IMG/VR virus record: IMGVR_UViG_3300042386_001233
Location: 124,001-188,000 of that record
Length of the DNA: 64,000 nt
Reading direction: 5' to 3' (one strand)
This document shows positions 2,453 to 62,667 of the stretch, in pieces. Position 1 is the stretch's first letter. The number at the start of each line of letters is the position of its first letter. A program made the translations under genes and the position numbers. The notes beneath the pieces are model-generated. The model saw only the letters and a list, made by a program, of their open reading frames with translations, made no database searches and was not told the DNA's origin.

Positions 2453-2881
2453 TTACTTAGTTAACTTTTTCCACTGATCAGGATCTGGTCTGTCTTTATC
2501 TCCTCGTTTAGCTGGCTTATAATTCTTGCCTTCTCGTTCTTTTTTCTTGCGGATATTATCCCAAAGTCCAGGCTTATCCCCAGCAAAAGAGTTATCGTCC
2601 TCTGATGGTACATACTTCACAAAATCGTGAATGGTTCGCATGTAATCCTCAGTTATGGCGATTTTACCCTGTAGCCAGCTTTCTGTCAAGTTTTCTTTAA
2701 CTGACGGGTCACCTAGAGAGTCAAGTATGTTTTTAGCATGTTGCATGATTGCTGTGAGTGAGCCGATATTCATCTCTAGGAAGTCTTGTTTATATTCATT
2801 TAACTCTGTCTTTGGAGACTCAATTTCTTGATTCTCTACTGCTGCCTGAACATTTTTTAGTATATCGTATATTCTGTCCAT
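2453..2881 (-). CDS. hypothetical phage protein with small conserved modules
   Basis: LTESWLQGKIAITEDYM and PGLWDNIRKKK motifs resemble modules I recall from large aquatic phage proteins. Confidence 0.55.
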   Translation of the reverse strand: MDRIYDILKNVQAAVENQEIESPKTELNEYKQDFLEMNIGSLTAIMQHAKNILDSLGDPSVKENLTESWLQGKIAITEDYMRTIHDFVKYVPSEDDNSFAGDKPGLWDNIRKKKEREGKNYKPAKRGDKDRPDPDQWKKLTK

Positions 2882-2908: not shown

Positions 2909-3502
2909 TTATGTCTGTAAAGTTAAAAAGTTGTCTATACCCATTTGTTCAATAAGCTTTAAGTAGCCTTCGTATAGTTTTATGCCATCTTCACTACCTT
3001 GTAGTAGAGGAATCATTATATTGGCTGTTAGTTCATCTCCTACCGCCCTAGCTGCAACAATAGTTGCTTTTTCTGTATCTGCAGCCTCTCTTACAGATGC
3101 TAAGTTATAGTTGATAATAGCAACCATGTCATGTCGTGTCCATGATGGAGGAGACACTACTAGTGGTTGATAATCTTGATCAAAAAATTCTAGTCTTGTT
3201 AAGTTGATTATTGAGTGTTGGTGTTCTTCTAGGGCATCTGCTTTAATGATAGCAGCAAGTTTCTTATATCCCCATCTTTCAAGATGAACAGCTTGAGCAC
3301 TTAATGAAGTTGTTTGTTGCCAGTGTATATTCAAAGACTTTTTAAGTAATCCGATAACATTATTTTCGGTCTCAGATACAACATTTTCTATAGTTTCATT
3401 AACCTCATTAGTTTCATTAGTCTGGCTAGCTTGTACTTCGTCCACTTGATTTTCCTTTACTTCAGCATTTTCGTTTAATAGTTCATCTATTGTTTTGGTC
3501 AT
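2909..3502 (-). CDS. bacterioferritin-like protein with degenerate ferroxidase centre
   Basis: Aligns by eye to Bfr (WGYKKLA, EEHQH, GDELTA, LIEQMGIDNFL); acidic N-terminal extension. Confidence 0.75.
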   Translation of the reverse strand: MTKTIDELLNENAEVKENQVDEVQASQTNETNEVNETIENVVSETENNVIGLLKKSLNIHWQQTTSLSAQAVHLERWGYKKLAAIIKADALEEHQHSIINLTRLEFFDQDYQPLVVSPPSWTRHDMVAIINYNLASVREAADTEKATIVAARAVGDELTANIMIPLLQGSEDGIKLYEGYLKLIEQMGIDNFLTLQT

Positions 3503-4001
3503 AATTATTAATCCATTTTTTATAGTTAGTATAAAATTGTTCTAAGTGCTGTTCATTGCGTATCATTCCTTCTATAATATTACACTGTACGCATAAAATT
3601 CCTCTAACCTTACCAGTATTGTGATCATGATCTATAACGGCAGCATTTCCTTTATTCTTAGCATGGTGAAAAACTGCAATACCACAGATACCGCAGTTCT
3701 TTATTGCTCTTAAATGTTTTAGCTCTTCTATAGTAATATTGTATTTTGTTATAAATTTGTAACAGGTTGTGCAGATTGTCGAACTGAAATATATGTGCCT
3801 GGTTTTATTGCATGATTGACATTGACCTATGTTTCCTTTACTCATTCTACATAGTCTACAGAAATTGTGTTTTTTGGATTTGAAAATAGTTCCACACTCG
3901 CAAGCCTTTAGCTTAAGTTTGCAATAATCACAAAATTTTCTAGAATTTTGAGGGACCTCATTTAATTTACATTTTCTACATTTTCTCATGATTATTACCA
4001 A
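3483..4001 (-). CDS. endonuclease VII-like homing endonuclease with Zn fingers
   Basis: CGIC...IDHDHNTGKVRGILCVQCN motif; multiple CxxC pairs. Confidence 0.85.
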   Translation of the reverse strand: MVIIMRKCRKCKLNEVPQNSRKFCDYCKLKLKACECGTIFKSKKHNFCRLCRMSKGNIGQCQSCNKTRHIYFSSTICTTCYKFITKYNITIEELKHLRAIKNCGICGIAVFHHAKNKGNAAVIDHDHNTGKVRGILCVQCNIIEGMIRNEQHLEQFYTNYKKWINNYDQNNR

Positions 4002-4531
4002 CTCTTACATGCCCAATATCGACTTTTCCACTTTGGCCCAGGATTATCACAATTCATTCTAGCTCTAAAACTTTTCCTTCGTGAAGGAATATTTTTTTTA
4101 ATTTTCATGTTAGGATCACCAAATCTAACAATAACTACTTTACCCTTGTCATTTTTAACATAAACGGCAGATTTTTTAGGACCGTCAGGAGTTCTAAAAG
4201 GTTTATTAAGAGTAACCTTGCGTCCTTGATATTCTGAAGATACGGCACATAGATCAAATTCTTCTGTTACTTCATCAGTATCAACATAGTCATTTTCATT
4301 GGGTAAAATCAAATTAGCTTTAGTTAGCTCTTCACCGTCACTATCGTATTCATTATCTATGTAGGAAATAGCCTCGCACACTTGCTCCAACAATGAAGCT
4401 TTGACCTGACCAAGACACGCTGCTATTCTTTGTTGAGAATCTGGATAGTCTTTTTTCATAGCCTCATCACCCATGCATCTTGCAACAAAATTTTTAGATT
4501 TTTCATCAGGATTTGGTTTTGGAATTGGCAT
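3995..4531 (-). CDS. conserved viral hypothetical protein
   Basis: C-terminal VRFGDPNMKIK...RRKSFRARMNC...RYWACKSW module typical of aquatic phages; N-terminal PIPKP...FVARCM...QRIAAC module. Confidence 0.6.
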   Translation of the reverse strand: MPIPKPNPDEKSKNFVARCMGDEAMKKDYPDSQQRIAACLGQVKASLLEQVCEAISYIDNEYDSDGEELTKANLILPNENDYVDTDEVTEEFDLCAVSSEYQGRKVTLNKPFRTPDGPKKSAVYVKNDKGKVVIVRFGDPNMKIKKNIPSRRKSFRARMNCDNPGPKWKSRYWACKSW

Positions 4532-4540
4532 AATATTAAC

Positions 4541-5602
4541 CTATTTATTCATGTAACTGAGTATCTTTTGTGCTGTATTTGTCCACGATAACTGATTAGC
4601 AGTATTTACACCAGCAGGATTAGTATTAATGTGATTATTGACCACATATCGCATATAATCGATCAATATGTCTTTTTCAGATTGATCTATTTTTGCCCAA
4701 TTACCCTGACCCATAAAAGCCTTGCCGTCATGGGCTTTTTCAGTAGTCGATATATCGACTAAATATGAGTTGTCTTTATTACAAAACTCTGTATGTGCTG
4801 AATAATTAGTAGTTATAACAGGTTTATTCATAGCCATACACTCTAATAACTCCATATTCCAACCCTCTGCTCTTGAGGGGAAAATACCACAATTAGCTTT
4901 TGATATTAGTTCTGCAATCTCAGAATGTTGAGCAAACCCCGAAAATAATTTAACTCTACTATCGTTTTGGTACATATTCTTCCACTGCTCAATTTCAGCA
5001 GGAGAGGAGTATCCATTGGTTGTTTCTGAAGCTAAAATCCAAAGTTCAACATCTGGATTATTTGGAAAAGCTTTGGTAAATAATTCTAATAAAATATCAT
5101 GACCTTTTCTTACTTCCCACTTGCCTATGTTAATAAATACATACTTATTATCAGATGGTTGTGAATATCTAGACTTATCAAATATCGACAAGTCAACGCC
5201 AAGCGGAGCAACATGAACTGGAGTTGAAACGTGCTTAGACACTACATCGGCTGCCCACTGACTAGTTGTAAAAATACCATCTGGAGTTTTTAGGCTATTG
5301 ATTTCTATATCACTAAAAGTATCTAGTTCAAAAAAGGGAAAAGCAAAATATGGACCTCTTCCTACATGCTCTAATAAGTCAAACTGATGCCATATTTTAA
5401 GATGAGGAGCATTTATATCGCATAAATATCTTTGTTTAAGAATATTTGATACAAAGGCGTGATCCTCTTGTGTTTCTACTGATGGCTGACCTATTGGGAA
5501 ATATGATATAACATTATTGAGAGCGCTAAGACCCTTAATAATATTGTAGGAAGCTATGCCATATCCTGTACTGTTGATTGGTGCCGACACATTGATGTTC
5601 AT
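4541..5602 (-). CDS. glycosyltransferase, GT-B fold (GT4-like)
   Basis: TGYG N-terminus, GKWEVRKGHDIL, FPSRAEGWNMELLECMAMNKPVITT (EX7E motif). Confidence 0.9.
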   Translation of the reverse strand: MNINVSAPINSTGYGIASYNIIKGLSALNNVISYFPIGQPSVETQEDHAFVSNILKQRYLCDINAPHLKIWHQFDLLEHVGRGPYFAFPFFELDTFSDIEINSLKTPDGIFTTSQWAADVVSKHVSTPVHVAPLGVDLSIFDKSRYSQPSDNKYVFINIGKWEVRKGHDILLELFTKAFPNNPDVELWILASETTNGYSSPAEIEQWKNMYQNDSRVKLFSGFAQHSEIAELISKANCGIFPSRAEGWNMELLECMAMNKPVITTNYSAHTEFCNKDNSYLVDISTTEKAHDGKAFMGQGNWAKIDQSEKDILIDYMRYVVNNHINTNPAGVNTANQLSWTNTAQKILSYMNK

Positions 5603-6720
5603 TTTTCAAATATCCTATTATGAGTATTGTTAACTTGTATAAATGTTGTTTTTTTACCAAAGTCTTTAATTTTAGAAGCTCCAACATAAGTGCATGAACT
5701 TCTAAGACCTCCCATTATATCCAACATAATATCCTCAGTAGTTCCCTTATATGGAATAATAACGGATTTTCCTTCACTGGTTCTATAGTTAGCAACTCCG
5801 TTATGATATTTATCCATTGCGTCCTTGGAACTCATACCATAGAACTTAAGACGTATCTTTCTTTTTTCTGTTTCATATCCAGGATTAAATGGTTGCCAAA
5901 ATTCTCCTGCAAGACCTGCTTTGACGCACTTATATTCGTATTCCCATTCCCCTTCACAGCAGTCTGTACCAGCAAGCATACTGCCAAGCATAACGAAATC
6001 TGTATTTGCACCAAAAGCTTTACAAATATCAGCAACTATTTTACAACCCCCATCGCTGCAAATGTGTCCACCAATACCATGAGCAGCGTCGGCACACTCC
6101 ATTACGGCAGACAGCTGGGGGTATCCCACGCCAGTTTTTAATCTTGTAGTACAAACAGATCCTGAACCTATACCGACCTTCACTATGTCCACCAGTCCGT
6201 GCATCAGCAGTTCTTCTGTCATTTCCGGAGTAACAACATTCCCAGCCATAATAACAATATCAGGATACATATCCCTAATATGTTTGACAGCCTTAACGAA
6301 CTTATCGCTATATCCGTTGGCAACATCAACGCATACATTTGGTAAATATAAGCCCTTAAGTTTTAGTCTGTCAAAAGTGTCTATGAGTTTCTCTATATCT
6401 GGCTTATTAATTCCTGTAGAATAGAAGGAAAGTTCTGGTTTTTGAGATTTTGTAAAATAGTCAACAATCTCATCAATAGAGTAGTGTTTATGCAAACATG
6501 TTATAGCATTGAATTGAGCCAGCACTCCTGCCATACTCATTGTGCCGGTTGTGTCCATATTGGCGGCAACAATAGGAGTACAAGATAAAAATCTTGTAGA
6601 ATATAGAAATTTAAAATCTCGTTGTAGAGAAACCTCTGATCTACTACCAAGTCTTGATCTCTTGGGTTTAATCAGTACATCGTCAAAATCTAGTTTTAGT
6701 TCATTGATAATTTTTTGCAT
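5599..6720 (-). CDS. guaC: GMP reductase
   Basis: LDFDDVLIKPKRS, PIVAANMDTTG, VDVANGYS, KVGIGSGSVCTTR...GVGYPQLSA, SDGGC, FYGMSS, YRTSEGK, GGLRSSCTYVGA. Confidence 0.92.
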   Translation of the reverse strand: MQKIINELKLDFDDVLIKPKRSRLGSRSEVSLQRDFKFLYSTRFLSCTPIVAANMDTTGTMSMAGVLAQFNAITCLHKHYSIDEIVDYFTKSQKPELSFYSTGINKPDIEKLIDTFDRLKLKGLYLPNVCVDVANGYSDKFVKAVKHIRDMYPDIVIMAGNVVTPEMTEELLMHGLVDIVKVGIGSGSVCTTRLKTGVGYPQLSAVMECADAAHGIGGHICSDGGCKIVADICKAFGANTDFVMLGSMLAGTDCCEGEWEYEYKCVKAGLAGEFWQPFNPGYETEKRKIRLKFYGMSSKDAMDKYHNGVANYRTSEGKSVIIPYKGTTEDIMLDIMGGLRSSCTYVGASKIKDFGKKTTFIQVNNTHNRIFEK

Positions 6721-6721
6721 T

Positions 6722-6925
6722 TTATGTTTTCTTCAAGTATTCATCAGTATCATAACACTTCCATGTTTTGTGGCTTTCAAAACCACGCTCGCTAACACAA
6801 ATTTTTGGTCCGGTTAAGAGACCCTTCCCTTTAAAATGATATAATGCTGCCAATATTGCGGATATTGGATCATTACAATCAATGATATATTTTATTTGAC
6901 CAGACTTTACATAATATTTAGGCAT
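6722..6925 (-). CDS. hypothetical protein
   Basis: 67 aa, tightly packed between guaC and the NDT-like gene. Confidence 0.55.
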   Translation of the reverse strand: MPKYYVKSGQIKYIIDCNDPISAILAALYHFKGKGLLTGPKICVSERGFESHKTWKCYDTDEYLKKT

Positions 6926-6926
6926 G

Positions 6927-7457
6927 TTATACCGAGAAAAAATACCATCTTTTATAGGTATCTATGTTTTCCGATGTGTTTATATGAGAAAGATAATCTT
7001 TGATATCATCCCAAGAAGAAAAAATAGTTTGATGTGGTATTGTGCCGAATAACCAATCCGGGGCGTTTATCTTACCTTGCTCCATATGAATTATTATTGG
7101 CTTTTTCTGACGATTAGCCCAAAATATTTCTTCATATGTTCCGCATGGATGAATATCAAGATTCAGATTCACGACCAAAAAGTCACTAATATCTACAAGT
7201 CTTAAATCTACCCTGCGAATAACTTTCATCATTTCTGCAAGTTCATCGTATCTCTCTGCTTTTTTCAGTTTGGTCTTAATAGTATGAGAGTCACTGTCTT
7301 CCATACCTGTGTTTGTTGGCTTAGTAATAGGATTAAAGACTATGGAACCCATTTCTTCAAGAAATGGAGTAATATTATCTCTCCAAGTAGCTCCGCGATC
7401 AGCAACTCTATCCATAGCCCCGGCCAAATAAACTCGTTGATTCTTCAATCTATTCAT
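6927..7457 (-). CDS. nucleoside 2-deoxyribosyltransferase-like / nucleotide hydrolase
   Basis: VYLAGAM...WR...FNP...DLRLVDISDFLVV...GTYEE motif set. Confidence 0.75.
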   Translation of the reverse strand: MNRLKNQRVYLAGAMDRVADRGATWRDNITPFLEEMGSIVFNPITKPTNTGMEDSDSHTIKTKLKKAERYDELAEMMKVIRRVDLRLVDISDFLVVNLNLDIHPCGTYEEIFWANRQKKPIIIHMEQGKINAPDWLFGTIPHQTIFSSWDDIKDYLSHINTSENIDTYKRWYFFSV

Positions 7458-7606
7458 ATTTAATTAGTAGCGATCAGTAAATAAAAAGGTAAATAAGTTT
7501 CTTGACGAATATAATCTATGACAGCTAGATCTGTCATGTATTTTATATTGGGCGTCTATCATGCCAAAAACTATTGCCAAAACCAAAAAGAATAATATAA
7601 CTTCAA

Positions 7607-8326
7607 TCATGTTAGGTATCCAATATAATTGTGTCTCATGCGATTAACTTCATCAATCATCTGTTGTAGATGTTTTGGGTCAGTAGACCGACCAGATGGG
7701 TTATGATAGTACAAACCGACTGGGTGGTTGACCATCTTTATTCTAGCACCTCCCGCAGCACAACGCAACCACATATCTCCATCAGAAGCCGTCTTATAGT
7801 TTTCATCAAATAGCCCAAATCTATCATGTAAATTCTTCTTCCATAACGGCATACAATGAGGACTGTTATTATTTAGTAGATTACGGAAAGAGTGGGGTAG
7901 GCATGGGTAGACTTGATCATATGTATTATCTTCATATTTTTCATTTGCTTCTGTAGAAACATAAGTAATTCCATATGCTATGTCTAGTAAAGGATCTCTG
8001 TCAAATGCTTTAAGCAAAATGTCTATACTGTCAGTACTTTTACGATCATCAATATTCCAGTTGCCTATTATAGATGATGAACATAAACGAATAGCAATGT
8101 TCCACGCAGCATATAATCCTGGATCTTTTTCTAGTTGATGATACTTTACATTATTAAACCTTTTTGCAATTGGTAGGATATAGTCTTTTTCATTTTCTGT
8201 AGAACTACAGTCAAGAAAAATAAATTCTGTATTATTAAATACTGATTGTTTTAGCATATCATTGAGATATCCTTCAATGAATTTTTCACCTTTATAAAAC
8301 GAACAAAATATTGAACATTTAAACAT
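7607..8326 (-). CDS. glycosyltransferase family 2
   Basis: FLDCSSTENE, GLYAAWN, NIDD, FGLFDENYKTASDGDMWLR; start moved to MFKCSIF. Confidence 0.88.
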   Translation of the reverse strand: MFKCSIFCSFYKGEKFIEGYLNDMLKQSVFNNTEFIFLDCSSTENEKDYILPIAKRFNNVKYHQLEKDPGLYAAWNIAIRLCSSSIIGNWNIDDRKSTDSIDILLKAFDRDPLLDIAYGITYVSTEANEKYEDNTYDQVYPCLPHSFRNLLNNNSPHCMPLWKKNLHDRFGLFDENYKTASDGDMWLRCAAGGARIKMVNHPVGLYYHNPSGRSTDPKHLQQMIDEVNRMRHNYIGYLT

Positions 8327-8339
8327 ATGCAGATTTTTA

Positions 8340-9443
8340 TTAGTTATATTTGAGAAAATGTATGATTTTATCGCAAATAAAGCTGATTTGACTTTCACTA
8401 AGAGTGGGATATGAAGGAACCATTAGACATTGGTTTTGTAATATTTTTGAGTTTTCATTAGATACGCATTTAATAGGCTTCAGATATTTATGCTGATGTA
8501 TATCATAAAACATTGGCCTTGTATCTATTCCTGCTTCGTACAAATATAATTCGAGTGATTTTTTCTTTTCTAAATCAAAATCTAGAAATCTCATACCAAG
8601 CATCCAATTAGAATGAGAGGTATCGGGATCTATATGCTGAAAAGATATATTAGGCAATTTTAAAATAGATCTATATTGATTAAAAATATTCTTTTTTTGA
8701 TTTATAATCCAGTCTAAATCATTTAGCTGACCATATAAAATAGCAGCTTGTATATTTGTCATTCTGTAATTATAGCCAAGATAATCATGAATGAATTTTT
8801 TATGGGATTGCCCTTGATTTTTTACTGTATTGATATAAGAGAACAGCTCATCATCAGAAGTTATAAAAGCACCACCTTCTCCGCATGTTATTGTTTTATT
8901 ACCAAAAAAAGATATTGATGAAGCAAAACATTCTGATCCAGATGGTTTATCTCCATAGGATCCCAAGAAGCCTTCACAATTGTCTTCTACAAAAATAGTA
9001 TTTGGAAATTTTTGTTTTAGTTTTGGAACATTGATAATATTTCCGATATTATGTACTATCAATACTGCGGTTTCTTCATCTAAAAGTTCTTCCAGATAAG
9101 AGTCTTCAAAATTCCAAGTATATAAATTGGCGTCTACTGGTATTAGTTCATACTTTTGAGTATATAAAAAAGCATTCCACGCAGCTACATATACATTATT
9201 TGGAACAATAATTTTTTTGATAGATGGATATTTATATTGTAGTGCCAAAGCTAATAGATGAGTAGCTGTCGTCCCATTATTCGTTAGTACGATTTTATGA
9301 TTGTTGTATTTAGCTTTTGATTTTAATAAATTTTTTGTTAAATCCAGATACTCTCCTTGAGATGATATCCAGCCACTATCCAGTGCTTTATGGGCATGTT
9401 TTAGATTATTTTTAGTTAGATACGGTTGGTATATAGGTATCAT
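8340..9443 (-). CDS. DegT/DnrJ/EryC1/StrS PLP aminotransferase (perosamine synthase-like)
   Basis: GWISSQG, TNNGTTA, EDNCEG, SFFGNKTITCGEGG (PLP Lys), GYNYRMTNIQAA. Confidence 0.92.
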   Translation of the reverse strand: MIPIYQPYLTKNNLKHAHKALDSGWISSQGEYLDLTKNLLKSKAKYNNHKIVLTNNGTTATHLLALALQYKYPSIKKIIVPNNVYVAAWNAFLYTQKYELIPVDANLYTWNFEDSYLEELLDEETAVLIVHNIGNIINVPKLKQKFPNTIFVEDNCEGFLGSYGDKPSGSECFASSISFFGNKTITCGEGGAFITSDDELFSYINTVKNQGQSHKKFIHDYLGYNYRMTNIQAAILYGQLNDLDWIINQKKNIFNQYRSILKLPNISFQHIDPDTSHSNWMLGMRFLDFDLEKKKSLELYLYEAGIDTRPMFYDIHQHKYLKPIKCVSNENSKILQNQCLMVPSYPTLSESQISFICDKIIHFLKYN

Positions 9444-35266: not shown

Positions 35267-37951
35267 CTACTTGATCAAACTACTCAACTGAATCTTAAAA
35301 AGGTCAATATTCTCCTGACTCATCTGCTCAATCCAATCCTTGCTAGACTTTCCATAATAGGAACTACGATCTTCAAGAATAGGATTCTGACTAGGCTTTA
35401 GGTCTGTCAGATTGCCGCTAACTTGATGAGTTCCCATCATATATTTCAGCATAGGATTCTTGTCTACTTCAGCCTTAATCTTCTCCCTAATTTCAGAGAT
35501 TTTCCATCTCTTAAGATCTTCAGTAGAAGTTCCACGAATAATCTTGAGATAACCCTCTGCCTTGTCTTGATTAGTCACAGAATACAAACGAGTGACAATC
35601 ATGTTTGTCAAGGTGTTATAGGCCAAATTAGCATTACGAATCTCTTTACTATCAACATCTTCAATCCCAGCCTCTTTCATAAGCTTAGAAATATGAGAAA
35701 GATATTCTGTTTGACTGAACTTAGTGATATTAAAAGGATGAATATGAACAGTATTAGCAAAGAACTCTGTTAGCATTGTTTTGTTCAAGCAATCAACAAG
35801 AGTCTTATTGCCAATAAACTTATCATAATCCAATCCAAAGATACTCAGAACATGAAACATAAACTGCTTATCGGTTGTTCCATACTGGCAATATCTATAG
35901 CCGCCAGTAGTCTTTTCTTCAGTTGCAAAATCTTTCTTGCAATATTCAACAAGCTTGTTGATAGAAGCAAGATTCTTAAAGTGCTTGTTAGCAACAACTT
36001 TAAGTTGACGCTTCAAGAAATCATTGAAGTTAACAAGATTATATCCGTCTTTCTCAAGCTTTTTAGCAAAAGCTGTTTTGATAGCATAAACCTTACTATC
36101 TCCAACCAAGTCCTTGACTATACTCTTGAGTTTATCATCACTAAGAGTAATAGCGATGTCATTAATCTCAGGATAACCAGACTCAGGCTCAGTCTTATAA
36201 CGAAGCATAGGAACATACACAATCTCATCCTGTTCCAGAAAATCCTCTAGTTGTTCTTCTGAAAGAATTCTGAGACAAGTAGCATCATTATAAGGATTAG
36301 TAATCTGCTTACTGTCCTTATCATAACCGTGGATAAAGAATACATCTTGATCACTAACACTACCATTAGAATTTCTATTGTAAGACTTTCTTGGGCCAGA
36401 ACTTTGTGTCAGATGTTTATAGTCTGAAACCTTGAGCAGATTTCCAGCCCCAACATCTTCGATCAGTTGATCAAAACCTTCTCCGCTTTTTGTATGATCC
36501 TTAGTGTCGATCATCAGATAAGCAAAGCAATCGTTTGCATTACAATATCTTGTAAGAATTTTCTTGGCACTTTCTTCACTAGCAACGTCGCAGACAAAGA
36601 AAGCCATCGTTCCCTTCTTTTTCTGATTATTCCAGTAATAGGAACCTTTACCAGTAAGAGTTTCATGATGGATTCTGTCTGTCAGAGCAACTTGGCGGCG
36701 AGAACGATAGCCAGCAGTCTTGTAATTAAAAACGTACAGACTCTTACCGGCAGGAATTTTATATTCCAAGTCATTGCCAGAGTTGATAGGATGATCTTTA
36801 CCCTTGGGATCAGTCCAAGTAGCACCAACACCCCAGCCGCCAGCCAATTCATTCATAGCATAGTATGAAGTAATTGCTTCTACCTTGTTTTGGGCAGCTT
36901 GAATTTTCTTGGAGAATTCTTCCTTCATCTCCATGTAAATTTCTTGAGTCTTTTTACGCAGTGTCTTGATAACATCTTTAGTATACTGCAAACCTTCACG
37001 GCTAACATCCATTTCCAGTTCACCGATACCAAAATCAAGCTCAAGATAAAGGCCGGAGTTCAGAATCTCTCCAACGAAACTCTTCCAAGAATCAATATCT
37101 GCTTTCTGGAAAGCCCTATTCCACTTCTGAATATGATCGGGCATCTCATCCTTCTCTTGACCAACAATCTGTGCGGTCTGAACAGGATAAGCGATATTGC
37201 CCATGATAGCTACGATACCACTATCAATTCGATGATAACCATTAGGGAAATAACTATTATCATTATTAAGTCGGCATACCCTCCAACCTTCACCACTAAT
37301 GATGATGTTGGTATTACTATACTTATGATCTTGCAGATTATTTCCGATACCACCTTCAAGGATGGGTTTCATGCGGAAATAGTGGAAGATTCTCTTAGCC
37401 TTGTCGGTAAACTCTTGGAAATCATGCTGCTTAACAGCGAAACTAATTTCAAGACCATTAGGCTCAGACGTATCTGAAGTATTGAAAAGATTCAGAGTAG
37501 GCACTCCGCTCTCGTCAATCGCAGCAATATAGGTATACTTCTTACCGTTGTAATATGATGCCGTGGTGAAACTCTTGGTATACGCGAAGGGACTCTTAGA
37601 CCCTAGACCAAGACAACCAACAAAATCATTACTATCATTCTTGTTGGACGCACCATAAGTTGTATACAAGTCCTCCATATCGGCCTGACTAAGACCAGTG
37701 CCATAATCTCTGACTACGAAGGTAGGATTGGCAGCGGTAGGCAAAGTCACCTTAAAGGGATTCTTATTCCCGGCAGAGATATGACTATCATAAGCATTAG
37801 TAGAAAGCTCACGAATCGCAGCCATAACCTTATCAGAGTAAAGAGAGTCTGAAAGGATTTTAAACATTTTGCTCGTCTGAGCAATATTGAACTGATTCCT
37901 GCTTGCAACTCCAACGCTGTGAGTCTCAATCGTCCTATCTGCCAACTTCAT
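35267..37951 (-). CDS. rIIA: T4 rIIA-like protein (GHKL ATPase N-terminus)
   Basis: FKILSDSLYSDK.AAIRELSTNAYDSH, RDYGTGLS, YGASNK, GCLGLGSKSPFAYT, SREGLQY; directly upstream of rIIB. Confidence 0.88.
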   Translation of the reverse strand: MKLADRTIETHSVGVASRNQFNIAQTSKMFKILSDSLYSDKVMAAIRELSTNAYDSHISAGNKNPFKVTLPTAANPTFVVRDYGTGLSQADMEDLYTTYGASNKNDSNDFVGCLGLGSKSPFAYTKSFTTASYYNGKKYTYIAAIDESGVPTLNLFNTSDTSEPNGLEISFAVKQHDFQEFTDKAKRIFHYFRMKPILEGGIGNNLQDHKYSNTNIIISGEGWRVCRLNNDNSYFPNGYHRIDSGIVAIMGNIAYPVQTAQIVGQEKDEMPDHIQKWNRAFQKADIDSWKSFVGEILNSGLYLELDFGIGELEMDVSREGLQYTKDVIKTLRKKTQEIYMEMKEEFSKKIQAAQNKVEAITSYYAMNELAGGWGVGATWTDPKGKDHPINSGNDLEYKIPAGKSLYVFNYKTAGYRSRRQVALTDRIHHETLTGKGSYYWNNQKKKGTMAFFVCDVASEESAKKILTRYCNANDCFAYLMIDTKDHTKSGEGFDQLIEDVGAGNLLKVSDYKHLTQSSGPRKSYNRNSNGSVSDQDVFFIHGYDKDSKQITNPYNDATCLRILSEEQLEDFLEQDEIVYVPMLRYKTEPESGYPEINDIAITLSDDKLKSIVKDLVGDSKVYAIKTAFAKKLEKDGYNLVNFNDFLKRQLKVVANKHFKNLASINKLVEYCKKDFATEEKTTGGYRYCQYGTTDKQFMFHVLSIFGLDYDKFIGNKTLVDCLNKTMLTEFFANTVHIHPFNITKFSQTEYLSHISKLMKEAGIEDVDSKEIRNANLAYNTLTNMIVTRLYSVTNQDKAEGYLKIIRGTSTEDLKRWKISEIREKIKAEVDKNPMLKYMMGTHQVSGNLTDLKPSQNPILEDRSSYYGKSSKDWIEQMSQENIDLFKIQLSSLIK

Positions 37952-48891: not shown

Positions 48892-48912
48892 CAGAATCCT
48901 TCCTGTTTAAAG

Positions 48913-48988
48913 TAGGGCGAGTTGGAGTCGAACCAACCTATGAACACCTTATAAGAGTGTCGGATGCAACCGGCTTACCTTCCGCCCC
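48913..48988 (-). tRNA. trnI: tRNA-Ile(UAU)
   Basis: GGGGCGG/UCGCCCU acceptor, anticodon arm ACACU-CUUAUAA-GGUGU, T-arm GUUGG-UUCGACU-CCAAC, A73. Confidence 0.85.
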
Positions 48989-62041: not shown

Positions 62042-62505
62042 ACTCCATCCAAAGGATCGTTTTCATAAGGATAACTAAACGGCCCTAAAACACTTTTTCT
62101 TTTTTCTTTCAGTAAATCAATTACATCATTGAAGCACGACTCGCACAGATCAACCTCAAATCTTGATCCATCATTCTTTGAGCCATATCCCCAACAAGAT
62201 TCAAGAGTGGCATAATCTGGCCCAACATCTGGATAGTTAGTGGTACTTTTCCCACAAGCATCACATGAAACGTCATCAAGAACTTTTCTAATTTCTTCTT
62301 TAAATGTTCTCATTACCATCTTCGTGACGGGTCACGCCTTTTTGGTTTCTTATTTTTAAGTTTAGTCATAGACCAACCGTATGGTACTGTATTGTATTGA
62401 CTTTTAGAAAGGCCAATATATTCTGCCCAGTAATCCATAGTTTTTTTGTATCCATCAATAATAACGTCTTTGGAACAAGTTTTCTTCAACAAATCTTCAA
62501 AACTC

Positions 62506-62667
62506 TTAGCCATTGTTAATAATCTCCAGAATAGTTTCTGCTAGTGTTGAACGCCCAACAATTCGTCCATCCTCATAAGGATCATTATAACTAGATTTTT
62601 GACTCCAACATTGCATAATACCCAAGCACATTCGCCTAATTTCTTCCAGTTTTTCTTCTTTAGTCAT
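62506..62667 (-). CDS. small hypothetical protein (not in ORF track), paralog of 60734-60916
   Basis: Manual translation MTKEEKLEEIRRMC...DPYEDGRIVGRSTLAETILEIINNG*. Confidence 0.6.
   Translation of the reverse strand: MTKEEKLEEIRRMCLGIMQCWSQKSSYNDPYEDGRIVGRSTLAETILEIINNG

What the first reader, a model, noticed from the sequence alone, without database searches (positions are those of the whole stretch)
2909..3502. Bacterioferritin with a dismantled ferroxidase centre and His at the heme-Met position
My by-eye alignment to E. coli Bfr gives E18H, E94V, E127S and H130G, with E51 and H54 kept and M52 replaced by H, plus a ~45 aa acidic N-extension. Inference: a non-catalytic subunit that could co-assemble with host Bfr to block storage or release iron, or a repurposed cage.
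Basis: partly seen in the sequence, partly recalled or inferred. Interest (0 to 1): 0.6.

Follow-up and report, generated by a model that had tools for sequence, protein, structure and literature searches.

The report
Phage bacterioferritin-like protein without ferroxidase centre
A 244-kb freshwater jumbo phage encodes a strongly conserved protein with the bacterioferritin fold that cannot oxidise iron the way bacterioferritin does; it belongs to a previously undescribed bacterioferritin-like lineage found here only in phage-like contexts, and its relatives often sit between the portal and capsid-protease genes.

Summary
Window 2909-3502 (-) is a real 197-aa gene with a confident bacterioferritin (Bfr) fold. 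HMMER, MAFFT and structural alignments all give E18H, E51 kept, M52H, H54 kept, E94V, E127S and H130G, plus a 47-aa acidic N-extension. All seven positions are invariant in 120 homologues. The domain is under strong purifying selection (dN/dS about 0.10).

It is not a decayed host Bfr. It nests inside a well-supported clade of about 155-aa Bfr-like proteins that share His18/Glu51/His54/Ser-Thr127/Glu128. That clade is known only from metagenomes, with no cultured phage and no PHROG family. Five of eleven sampled contexts lie between the portal and the prohead protease or capsid gene, and two more probably do.

The jumbo-phage subfamily additionally lost Glu94 and Tyr25. It fixed His at position 52 and gained a conserved 11-residue N-terminal helix on a variable acidic tether.

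Best reading: a phage-autonomous, non-ferroxidase Bfr-type shell protein that keeps a His-Glu-His single-metal site and displays docking peptides on its outside.

Co-assembly with host Bfr is not supported. Bis-His heme binding is unlikely. Capsid packaging remains an open and more novel possibility.

The parts
2909..3502 (-). Whole gene, 197 aa plus stop: Bfr-like protein of the phage clade (P0001)
   Evidence: ORF. Pfam Ferritin. 1298 homologues. dN/dS 0.096. It is the most conserved gene of its neighbourhood (median 79.6% identity against 49-76%).
3470..3502 (-). Residues 1-11: conserved N-terminal amphipathic motif, M-x-K-[TS]-I-[ED]-E-L-L-x-E
   Evidence: K3, I5 and L8 are present in 107/107 and L9 in 99/107 family members where the motif was located. 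AF2 predicts a helix at residues 5-17 with low confidence. No second strong carrier of the motif in the complete genome.
3362..3469 (-). Residues 12-47: variable-length, acidic, low-complexity tether
   Evidence: pLDDT below 50 for residues 12-40. 10 acidic against 1 basic residue. The distance from the motif to the HWQQ motif ranges 36-68 residues across the family, and the median net charge is -7.
2912..3361 (-). Residues 48-197: Bfr-fold domain (four-helix bundle plus short E helix)
   Evidence: AF2 block-mean pLDDT is about 88-95 over most of the domain and lower (65-81) across the 101-130 loop; helices at 35-76, 80-107, 126-153, 157-187 and 189-196. Foldseek top hits are Bfrs.
3323..3325 (-). 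His60 at the Bfr Glu18 position (iron site 1)
   Evidence: Invariant in the family and in all 44 rows of the H18 clade.
3215..3226 (-). Glu93-His94-Gln95-His96, aligned to Bfr Glu51-Met52-Lys53-His54. The ExxH motif is kept and His sits at the haem-Met position.
   Evidence: E and H (positions 51 and 54) are invariant clade-wide. His at position 52 is fixed in the jumbo-phage subfamily; elsewhere in the clade position 52 is mostly Arg and otherwise variable (a few other members also have His).
3092..3094 (-). Val137 at the Bfr Glu94 position (iron site 2 lost)
   Evidence: Glu or Asp is kept in most other H18-clade members. It is lost in this subfamily, including its nearest 155-aa relative P0126, and also in P0128 and P0169.
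2984..2995 (-). Ser170-Glu171-Asp172-Gly173, aligned to Bfr Glu127-Glu128-Gly129-His130
   Evidence: Ser/Thr127, Glu128 and a small residue at position 130 mark the whole H18 clade.
2915..2944 (-). C-terminal E helix (residues about 187-196, M-G-I-D-N-F-L-T-L-Q), aligned to Bfr M144-Q153 including the 4-fold-pore N148
   Evidence: The -NYLQ- motif of Bfr 4-fold pores is described in PMC12120770.
3995..4531 (-). Conserved upstream neighbour, 178 aa, unknown function (phrog_7595)
   Evidence: Adjacent in 80/80 related loci. No Pfam match.
2453..2881 (-). Conserved downstream neighbour, 142 aa, unknown function
   Evidence: Adjacent in 78/80 related loci. Homologues are 142-362 aa with a variable middle. 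No Pfam or PHROG match.

Best explanation
The gene encodes a phage-specific protein with the bacterioferritin fold that no longer works as a bacterioferritin.

Shown:
- The fold is Bfr-like.
- Four of the six di-iron ligands and the haem Met are replaced.
- These states are fixed under strong purifying selection.
- The protein belongs to a monophyletic Bfr-like clade, seen only in phage-like contexts, that is defined by His18/Glu51/His54/Ser-Thr127/Glu128.
- Each complete phage genome has exactly one copy.

Inferred:
- The second iron site is abolished (Val137, Ser170, Gly173, and Leu at the Tyr25 position), so Fe2+ oxidation and mineral-core formation by the Bfr mechanism are impossible.
- The first site is remodelled from Glu/Glu/His to His60/Glu93/His96. 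It is invariant across the clade, so it most likely still binds a single divalent metal (Fe2+ or Zn2+-like) without redox turnover.
- The retained E helix, the 4-fold-pore-like motif and Glu128/Glu135 suggest that the subunits still form Bfr-type dimers and probably a 24-mer shell.
- In Bfr the N-terminus lies on the outer surface. A shell would therefore display 24 acidic, flexible tethers of about 25-55 residues, each ending in the conserved 11-residue helix. That arrangement is typical of a multivalent docking peptide for an unknown partner.

I therefore read it as a phage-autonomous, non-oxidising metal-binding or scaffold shell expressed from a tight operon in a non-structural (sigma factor, nucleotide-metabolism) block of the genome. 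It would act on its own rather than by poisoning host Bfr.
For: - Fold.
- Ligand mapping and invariance.
- Selection: dN/dS 0.096 and no indels; most conserved gene of the neighbourhood.
- Clade: graded relatives. The ligand table shows H18, E51, H54, S/T127 and E128 in about 44 cluster representatives. The H18 clade has SH-aLRT 97, with the query subfamily nested inside at 97-98.
- Phage-only distribution: all 11 sampled contexts are phage-like. Only 3 of 185,579 species genomes carry the family, and all three are freshwater MAG contigs with discordant labels.
- One ferritin-like gene per complete genome.
- Cage features: the E helix and N-[YFW]-L motif are kept clade-wide, and pI is 4.3-5.4, as for Bfrs.
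- The Bfr N-terminus is on the outside of the shell: PMC10301331.
- Tether and motif statistics.
- Tight gene spacing and conserved synteny.
Against: - No oligomer, metal or partner was observed.
- The homodimer-plus-haem prediction gave no verdict.
- Metal binding at His60/Glu93/His96 is inferred from homology and invariance only; no model coordinates were available to measure geometry.
- Other clade-wide invariant histidines (His73 and His124, Bfr positions 31 and 81) are unexplained and could define the real functional site.
- No docking partner is identified.
- The relatives' position in head modules points to a capsid-linked role that this explanation does not use.
Confidence: 0.45

Rival explanations
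1. Capsid cargo. The clade's proteins are loaded into procapsids. In the jumbo-phage subfamily the N-terminal helix acts as a capsid-targeting or propeptide signal, so the protein ends up inside the virion.
For: - H18-clade genes lie between the portal and the prohead protease or capsid gene, often with overlapping stops and starts. This holds in L099, L100 and L105 (Phage_portal, then the ferritin-like gene, then Peptidase_S78, then Phage_capsid), in L102 (Phage_portal_2, then the gene, then a 638-aa capsid protein) and in L104 (the gene, then a ClpP-type fusion). It probably also holds in L096 and L097.
- The family's N-terminal motif resembles the T4 IPII/IPIII N-terminus read from NC_000866 (MKTYQEFIAE). 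K, T and two E are identical, and three hydrophobic positions fall in register.
- A ferritin-like protein of phage G was detected in virion proteomics (PMC12484599).
Against: - In the complete genome the gene sits about 60 kb or more from the blocks that hold the giant ORFs and the portal-like gene, among sigma-factor and nucleotide-metabolism genes.
- No T4-type protease, capsid or portal family was detected.
- No other ORF carries the motif.
- The putative P1 Glu is present in only about 75% of members.
- Head-module relatives have no extension.
- Other relatives sit next to an integrase, a repressor or an RNR gene.
- A short 9-residue resemblance can arise by chance.
Confidence: 0.2
2. Poison or modulating subunit. 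The protein co-assembles with host Bfr into hetero-24-mers and blocks iron storage or forces release.
For: - The fold is Bfr-like and the E helix is retained.
- Natural hetero-Bfrs with specialised chains exist, and foreign Bfr chains can mix into them (PMC12120770 and PMC12867745; PDB 9iig, 9h1u and 9bts appear among the fold hits).
Against: - About 25% identity to Bfrs, far below the equivalog cut-off.
- An ancient clade seen only in phage-like contexts, spanning contigs of 34-67% GC, rather than host-derived copies.
- Dimer-interface and haem-pocket positions are replaced by an invariant polar set: W61, T64, T65, S68, K87.
- The host is unknown.
- Nothing explains the conserved N-terminal peptide.
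Confidence: 0.1
3. Bis-His haem protein. His94 from two subunits ligates a b-type haem at the dimer interface, giving an electron-transfer or haem-sequestering shell.
For: His94 is invariant in 120 members at exactly the Met52 position.
Against: - E. coli Bfr M52H lacks haem in vivo (PMC3184983).
- Sister lineages carry Arg, Gln, Val, Ala or Ser at position 52, so haem ligation is not a clade trait.
- Hydrophobic pocket residues of E. coli Bfr (L19, I22, F26, Y45; this residue list is from memory) are W, T, S and K here.
- The prediction with haem gave no verdict.
Confidence: 0.1
4. Functionless relic of a captured bfr gene.
For: Loss of four of the six catalytic ligands.
Against: - dN/dS is 0.096, with no indels in 75 loci.
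- 89 residues are invariant across 26 members that are 69-95% identical to the query.
- It is the most conserved gene of its neighbourhood.
- It is present once in each of five complete genomes.
Confidence: 0.02

Closest known systems
Bacterioferritin (Bfr, TIGR00754; e.g. E. coli Bfr 1BCF, Blastochloris viridis Bfr 4AM2)
   Same: Four-helix bundle plus E helix, about 150 aligned residues, TM about 0.85. The ExxH motif of helix B is kept, as are W35-G36, Glu128, Glu135 and the N148-type 4-fold motif. The pI is acidic.
   Different: E18H, E94V, E127S, H130G, M52H, Y25L, H46A, Y58N and W133L. It has a 47-aa N-extension, a 3-residue insertion in the B-C loop, and scores 30 bits against the 125.6-bit cut-off.
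Non-catalytic chains of heteromeric bacterioferritins (Shewanella SoBfr2, Magnetospirillum Bfr2)
   Same: A Bfr-fold chain with an incomplete ferroxidase centre.
   Different: Those chains keep Met52 and bind haem. They are encoded with, or work with, a catalytic partner chain. Here there is no Met52 and no partner gene in the phage (one ferritin-like gene per genome), and the protein falls in a separate clade.
H18 clade of about 155-aa phage Bfr-like proteins (metagenomic only; e.g. P0224, P0228, P0147, P0274)
   Same: The query nests inside this clade. Shared features are His18, Glu51, His54, Ser/Thr127, Glu128, a small residue at 130, His31, His81 and the C-terminal motif.
   Different: Most members keep Glu/Asp94 and Tyr25, have Arg at position 52, lack any N-extension, and often sit between the portal and the prohead protease.
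Dps / ferritin-like proteins of phages (e.g. phage G gp346; Dps-like entries in BFVD)
   Same: Ferritin-superfamily proteins encoded by phages. The phage G protein was detected in virions.
   Different: Structural similarity is only weak (BFVD best E 4e-4; phage G gp346 E 0.16). Those are Dps or Ftn types, not Bfr-like.
T4 internal proteins with the capsid-targeting sequence
   Same: A short N-terminal K-T-hydrophobic-x-E-hydrophobic-hydrophobic-x-E motif.
   Different: No T4-type head genes are present, no other motif carriers exist, and the cargo domain is unrelated.

Membership tests
Ferritin-like domain (Pfam PF00210) | Profile match above the gathering score | tested here: met
   33.4 bits against 24.5, residues 52-187.
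Bacterioferritin (Bfr) | Four-helix bundle plus short fifth helix, closest to Bfr among ferritins | tested here: met
   AF2 model. The top 49 listed Foldseek PDB hits are all Bfr entries (one of them a Bfr-Ftn hetero-oligomer), with TM about 0.85.
Bacterioferritin (Bfr) | Di-iron ferroxidase ligands E18, E51, H54, E94, E127, H130 | tested here: not met
   Only E51 and H54 are kept. The others are H60, V137, S170 and G173.
Bacterioferritin (Bfr) | Met52 axial haem ligand | tested here: not met
   His94 occupies the position.
Bacterioferritin (Bfr) | NCBIfam TIGR00754 equivalog score | tested here: not met
   30 bits against a 125.55-bit cut-off.
Bacterioferritin (Bfr) | 24-mer shell | not testable with these tools
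   Only indirect evidence: the E helix, the 4-fold motif and Glu128/Glu135 are conserved. The dimer prediction gave no verdict.
Hetero-Bfr haem-binding (non-catalytic) chain | Met52 present, and a catalytic partner chain encoded alongside | tested here: not met
   His is at position 52. There is a single ferritin-like gene in each of five complete genomes.
Phage H18 Bfr-like clade (defined here) | His18, Glu51, His54, Ser/Thr127, Glu128, and placement inside the clade on a tree | tested here: met
   Ligand table. Clade SH-aLRT is 97, with the query nested inside at 97-98.
T4-type capsid-targeted internal protein | N-terminal CTS cleaved by a gp21-type prohead protease, in a phage with T4-type head genes | tested here: not met
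   The motif resemblance is only partial. PF03420, PF07068, PF07230 and PF20034 are absent from the complete genome.
Dps | Dps fold without an E helix, 12-mer, inter-subunit ferroxidase site | tested here: not met
   The best sequence and fold matches are Bfr, not Dps, and an E helix is present.

The most novel reading that the evidence does not exclude
The H18 clade would be a phage counterpart of encapsulin ferritin cargo: Bfr-like shells or subunits loaded into HK97-type procapsids, and encoded between the portal and the protease for that reason. In the jumbo-phage subfamily the conserved N-terminal helix on its acidic tether would be the capsid-targeting signal. The virion would then carry a metal-binding ferritin-like protein, either delivered with the DNA or protecting it.
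Probability: 0.15. Interest if true: 0.85.

Novelty: new variant of a known kind. Interest (0 to 1): 0.6.

Why it matters
Ferritin-family proteins are textbook iron stores. This work finds a large Bfr-like lineage, seen only in phage-like contexts, with a different and fixed metal-ligand set. The query's own 50%-identity cluster alone holds over 1,000 sequence clusters at 90% identity, and the wider lineage has dozens of 50% clusters. No cultured phage, PHROG family or cellular isolate carries it.

It gives ferritin biochemists a natural His-Glu-His variant of the Bfr site to study. It gives phage biologists a widespread, very strongly conserved late or head-module gene of unknown role. It also bears on how abundant freshwater jumbo phages handle metals.

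If the capsid-cargo reading were right, it would link phage capsids and encapsulin nanocompartments functionally as well as structurally.

Tried and rejected
- Complex prediction on two copies of residues 46-197 plus haem: score 0.02, 'no answer'. This is neither support nor evidence against.
- tblastn of the protein and of a head-module relative against 50,697 phage records: no match. PHROGs gave no family.
- megablast of 12 kb of the window against phage records: no match.
- T4-type head genes (PF03420, PF07068, PF07230) and PF20034: absent from the complete genome(s). PF04586 gave only a non-significant hit, E 0.025.
- Shared N-terminal tag: a strict regex and a PSSM found no second strong carrier in G001. 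A loose post-hoc pattern also hits the two downstream genes and the GMP reductase, but the PSSM does not support this, so I dropped it.
- Link to iron-dependent class I RNR: NrdB is present in only 1 of 5 complete genomes.
- A remembered 'QAxAIA' motif on prohead proteases was not found in the fetched head modules, so I dropped it.
- BFVD 'prohead protease' hits have rmsd 7-16 Å and low TM. I treat them as helical noise, not as ferritin-protease fusions.
- The promoter/terminator scan was at chance level.
- The search for related loci with the diverse H18 alignment failed because no conserved 7-mer was available.
- The ESM Atlas searches of neighbours gave leads only.
- The context of P0122 was uninformative.

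Full report
**1. The observation**

Window 2909-3502 (minus strand) is an ATG-to-stop ORF of 197 aa. It matches Pfam Ferritin above the gathering score (33.4 against 24.5 bits). Among solved structures it matches almost only bacterioferritins, with best E 1.3e-6.

The HMMER alignment to an E. coli Bfr chain and two MAFFT alignments give one mapping. The MAFFT alignments include E. coli Bfr read from the K-12 genome (L002:3250-3726:-). Codon coordinates were checked.

| E. coli Bfr | This protein |
|---|---|
| E18 | His60 |
| E51 | Glu93 (kept) |
| M52 | His94 |
| H54 | His96 (kept) |
| E94 | Val137 |
| E127 | Ser170 |
| H130 | Gly173 |

- Helices C, D and E align without gaps, so the register is firm.
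- An AlphaFold2 model built on 26 homologues is confident over residues 48-197, apart from the loop around 101-130, and shows four long helices plus a short fifth.
- Foldseek aligns about 150 columns of the model to Bfr chains, with TM about 0.85 by target.
- The N-extension is 47 residues, with 13 acidic and 2 basic.

**2. A selected state, not decay**

- A word-indexed search found 1298 relatives. The best 120 are all at least 68% identical, and many sit on contigs of 100-248 kb.
- All seven ligand positions are invariant in those 120. 89 residues are invariant in a spread of 26 members.
- In 75 related IMG/VR loci the domain is always 150 aa. Pairwise dN/dS has a median of 0.096.
- It is the most conserved gene of its neighbourhood: median 79.6% identity, against 66% for the GMP-reductase-like enzyme and 49-76% for the others.

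**3. The genome**

The window is 100% identical to positions 124001-188000 of IMG/VR contig 3300042386_001233. That contig is 243,821 bp with direct terminal repeats and is rated complete. Four other complete or near-complete relatives are 229-238 kb.

- The phage has rIIA, a DNA ligase, an endonuclease VII, a sigma-70-like factor and several glycosyltransferases.
- It has no T4-type capsid, portal or protease family.
- It has no nucleotide-level relative among 50,697 phage records.
- Its large structural ORFs have almost no PHROG matches.
- Only 3 of 185,579 species-representative genomes carry the gene. All three are freshwater MAG contigs (Baikal-type 'WB' and Lake Lanier) with discordant taxonomic labels. 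I read them as mis-binned phage DNA.

**4. Local context**

The gene sits in a tight minus-strand operon. In order of transcription it reads:

1. nucleoside-deoxyribosyltransferase-like gene
2. 67-aa ORF
3. GMP-reductase-like gene
4. glycosyltransferase
5. 178-aa ORF
6. endonuclease VII (bracketed: an insertion)
7. ferritin-like gene
8. 142-aa ORF
9. sigma factor

The 178-aa and 142-aa ORFs flank the gene in 80/80 and 78/80 related loci. The endonuclease VII is present in only 6 of 80. Each of five complete genomes has exactly one ferritin-like gene, so there is no catalytic partner chain.

**5. Where it comes from**

An exhaustive HMMER search of 1.84 billion cluster representatives with the domain alone gave 90 hits. 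I ran this costly search because both the function and the claim of a phage-only distribution were open.

Beyond the query's own family there is a graded series of about 155-aa proteins at 30-52% identity. Canonical Bfrs (E18, M52, E127, H130) appear only at E above about 1e-7.

The intermediate proteins share the following:
- His18, Glu51, His54, Ser/Thr127, Glu128 and a small residue at position 130
- mostly also Glu/Asp94 and Tyr25
- position 52 is usually Arg

On a maximum-likelihood tree of 78 rows (IQ-TREE quick search), these 44 'H18' rows form one clade with SH-aLRT 97. The query's subfamily is nested inside it, sister to P0126 (97) and then P0131 (98).

The dismantling therefore happened in two steps. 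An old remodelling (E18H, E127S, H130 to a small residue) defines the clade. A later step, on the branch leading to P0126 and this subfamily, lost Glu94 and Tyr25. Fixation of His at position 52 and the N-terminal extension came later still, within the jumbo-phage subfamily itself, since P0126 has Val at 52 and no extension.

**6. The clade looks phage-only, and it favours head modules**

Eleven independent contexts were read.

| Locus | Context of the ferritin-like gene |
|---|---|
| L099, L100 | TerS, TerL, Phage_portal, **gene**, Peptidase_S78, Phage_capsid; gene boundaries overlap or abut |
| L105 | Same order, with a 79-aa ORF before the gene |
| L102 | Lambda-type portal (Phage_portal_2), **gene**, 638-aa capsid protein |
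| L104 | **Gene**, then a 712-aa ClpP-type protease fusion |
| L096, L097 | Shared order; a downstream 397-417-aa protein is probably the major capsid protein (Atlas lead, 0.96, Phage_capsid_4; synteny) |
| L103 | Next to an integrase |
| L106 | Next to an HTH repressor |
| L101 | Near an intein-rich RNR |
| L098 | Next to an ATP-grasp gene |

- None of these proteins matches a PHROG or any deposited phage genome.
- The clade spans contigs of 39-67% GC, against 29-37% for the window.
- All members checked are acidic (pI 4.3-5.4) and nearly all keep the C-terminal G-x-[DQ]-N-[YFW]-L motif, two with Gln in place of Asn. This corresponds to the -NYLQ- lining of Bfr 4-fold pores (PMC12120770).

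**7. What the protein can and cannot do**

In Bfr, iron site 1 uses E18, H54 and the bridging E51 and E127. Site 2 uses E94, H130 and the same bridges. This is established knowledge, and the ExxH motifs are cited.

- Every site-2-specific ligand is gone. So are Tyr25, His46, Tyr58 and Trp133. Bfr-type oxidation and core nucleation are therefore excluded.
- Site 1 is converted to His60/Glu93/His96, which is invariant through the whole clade. I infer a single non-redox-cycling metal site. This is not shown.
- His94 is fixed in the jumbo-phage subfamily; elsewhere in the clade position 52 varies.
- E. coli Bfr M52H is haem-free in vivo (PMC3184983).
- The positions I remember as the hydrophobic haem pocket are W, T, T, S and K here.
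- I therefore consider haem binding unlikely. The complex prediction with haem gave no verdict and is not evidence either way.
- Two further histidines, His73 and His124 (Bfr positions 31 and 81), are conserved clade-wide (consensus) and remain unexplained.

**8. The N-extension**

- Residues 1-11 form a conserved amphipathic motif. K3, I5 and L8 are invariant in the 107 members where the motif was located.
- Residues 12-47 are a disordered acidic tether whose length varies by about 30 residues across the family.
[quoted passage not shown] A 24-mer would therefore display 24 tethered peptides.
- The motif resembles the N-terminus of T4 IPII/IPIII, read directly from NC_000866. However, this phage lacks T4-type head genes, no other ORF of the genome carries the motif, and the Glu that would be P1 is not invariant.

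**9. Verdict**

My best reading (0.45) is a phage-autonomous, non-ferroxidase Bfr-type shell with a single His-Glu-His metal site and external docking peptides. The main rival, and the more novel one (0.15-0.2), is capsid cargo, suggested by the head-module position of the relatives. I file it as a new variant of a known kind. It is a member of the ferritin-like superfamily and Bfr-like in fold, but it fails the defining catalytic, haem and equivalog tests for Bfr itself.

**Limits**

- No model coordinates were available to measure site geometry.
- The host is unknown.
- No alternative genetic code was used.

Noticed in passing
window 3483-4001 (-): An endonuclease VII-like ORF (Pfam PF02945) lies between the 178-aa ORF and the ferritin-like gene and overlaps its start by 20 nt. 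It is present in only 6 of 80 related loci, so it looks like a recent insertion, possibly a mobile nuclease.
   Followed up: partly
window 3995-4531 (-) and 2453-2881 (-): Two ORFs of unknown function flank the ferritin-like gene in 80/80 and 78/80 related loci. Homologues of the downstream one range from 142 to 362 aa, with conserved ends and a variable middle. They are possible functional partners.
   Followed up: partly
L099, L100, L102, L104, L105 (also L096, L097): Bfr-like genes of the same clade sit between the portal and the prohead protease or capsid gene. The phages involved have three different portal/protease types.
   Followed up: yes
G001 (complete genome of the same phage) 13704-67684, outside the window: Giant ORFs of 6454, 1169, 1250, 2137 and 2660 aa lie in the plus-strand block that I take to be structural. 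The genome is 243,821 bp with terminal repeats, and its large ORFs have almost no PHROG matches.
   Followed up: no
window 4541-9443 (-): A cluster of GT1 glycosyltransferase, GMP-reductase/IMPDH-like, nucleoside 2-deoxyribosyltransferase-like, GT2 and aminotransferase genes. It may be a nucleotide or DNA-modification pathway.
   Followed up: no
window 35267-37951 (-) and 48912-48988 (-): An rIIA homologue (phrog_612, E 2e-112) and a tRNA-Ile (anticodon TAT).
   Followed up: no
L110-L112 (genome contigs): The only three 'cellular' genomes carrying the family are freshwater MAG contigs labelled Chitinophagia, unclassified bacterium (141-kb contig) and Alphaproteobacteria. They are most likely mis-binned phage contigs.
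   Followed up: partly
P0192 (209 aa, metagenomic): An H18-clade member carries a different N-extension: a conserved-looking helix followed by a basic Lys/Arg-rich linker. N-terminal add-ons therefore arose more than once in the clade.
   Followed up: no
L101 1207-7827; L096 988-1302: Contigs carrying clade members also hold a 2206-aa ribonucleotide reductase with several inteins and an Acb2/Tad1-like anti-CBASS gene.
   Followed up: no
window 62313-62513 (-) (G001 186313-186513): A 66-aa ORF whose N-terminus (MAKSFEDLLKK) is the only other moderate match to the ferritin-like protein's N-terminal motif (PSSM 11.6 against 28.3).
   Followed up: no
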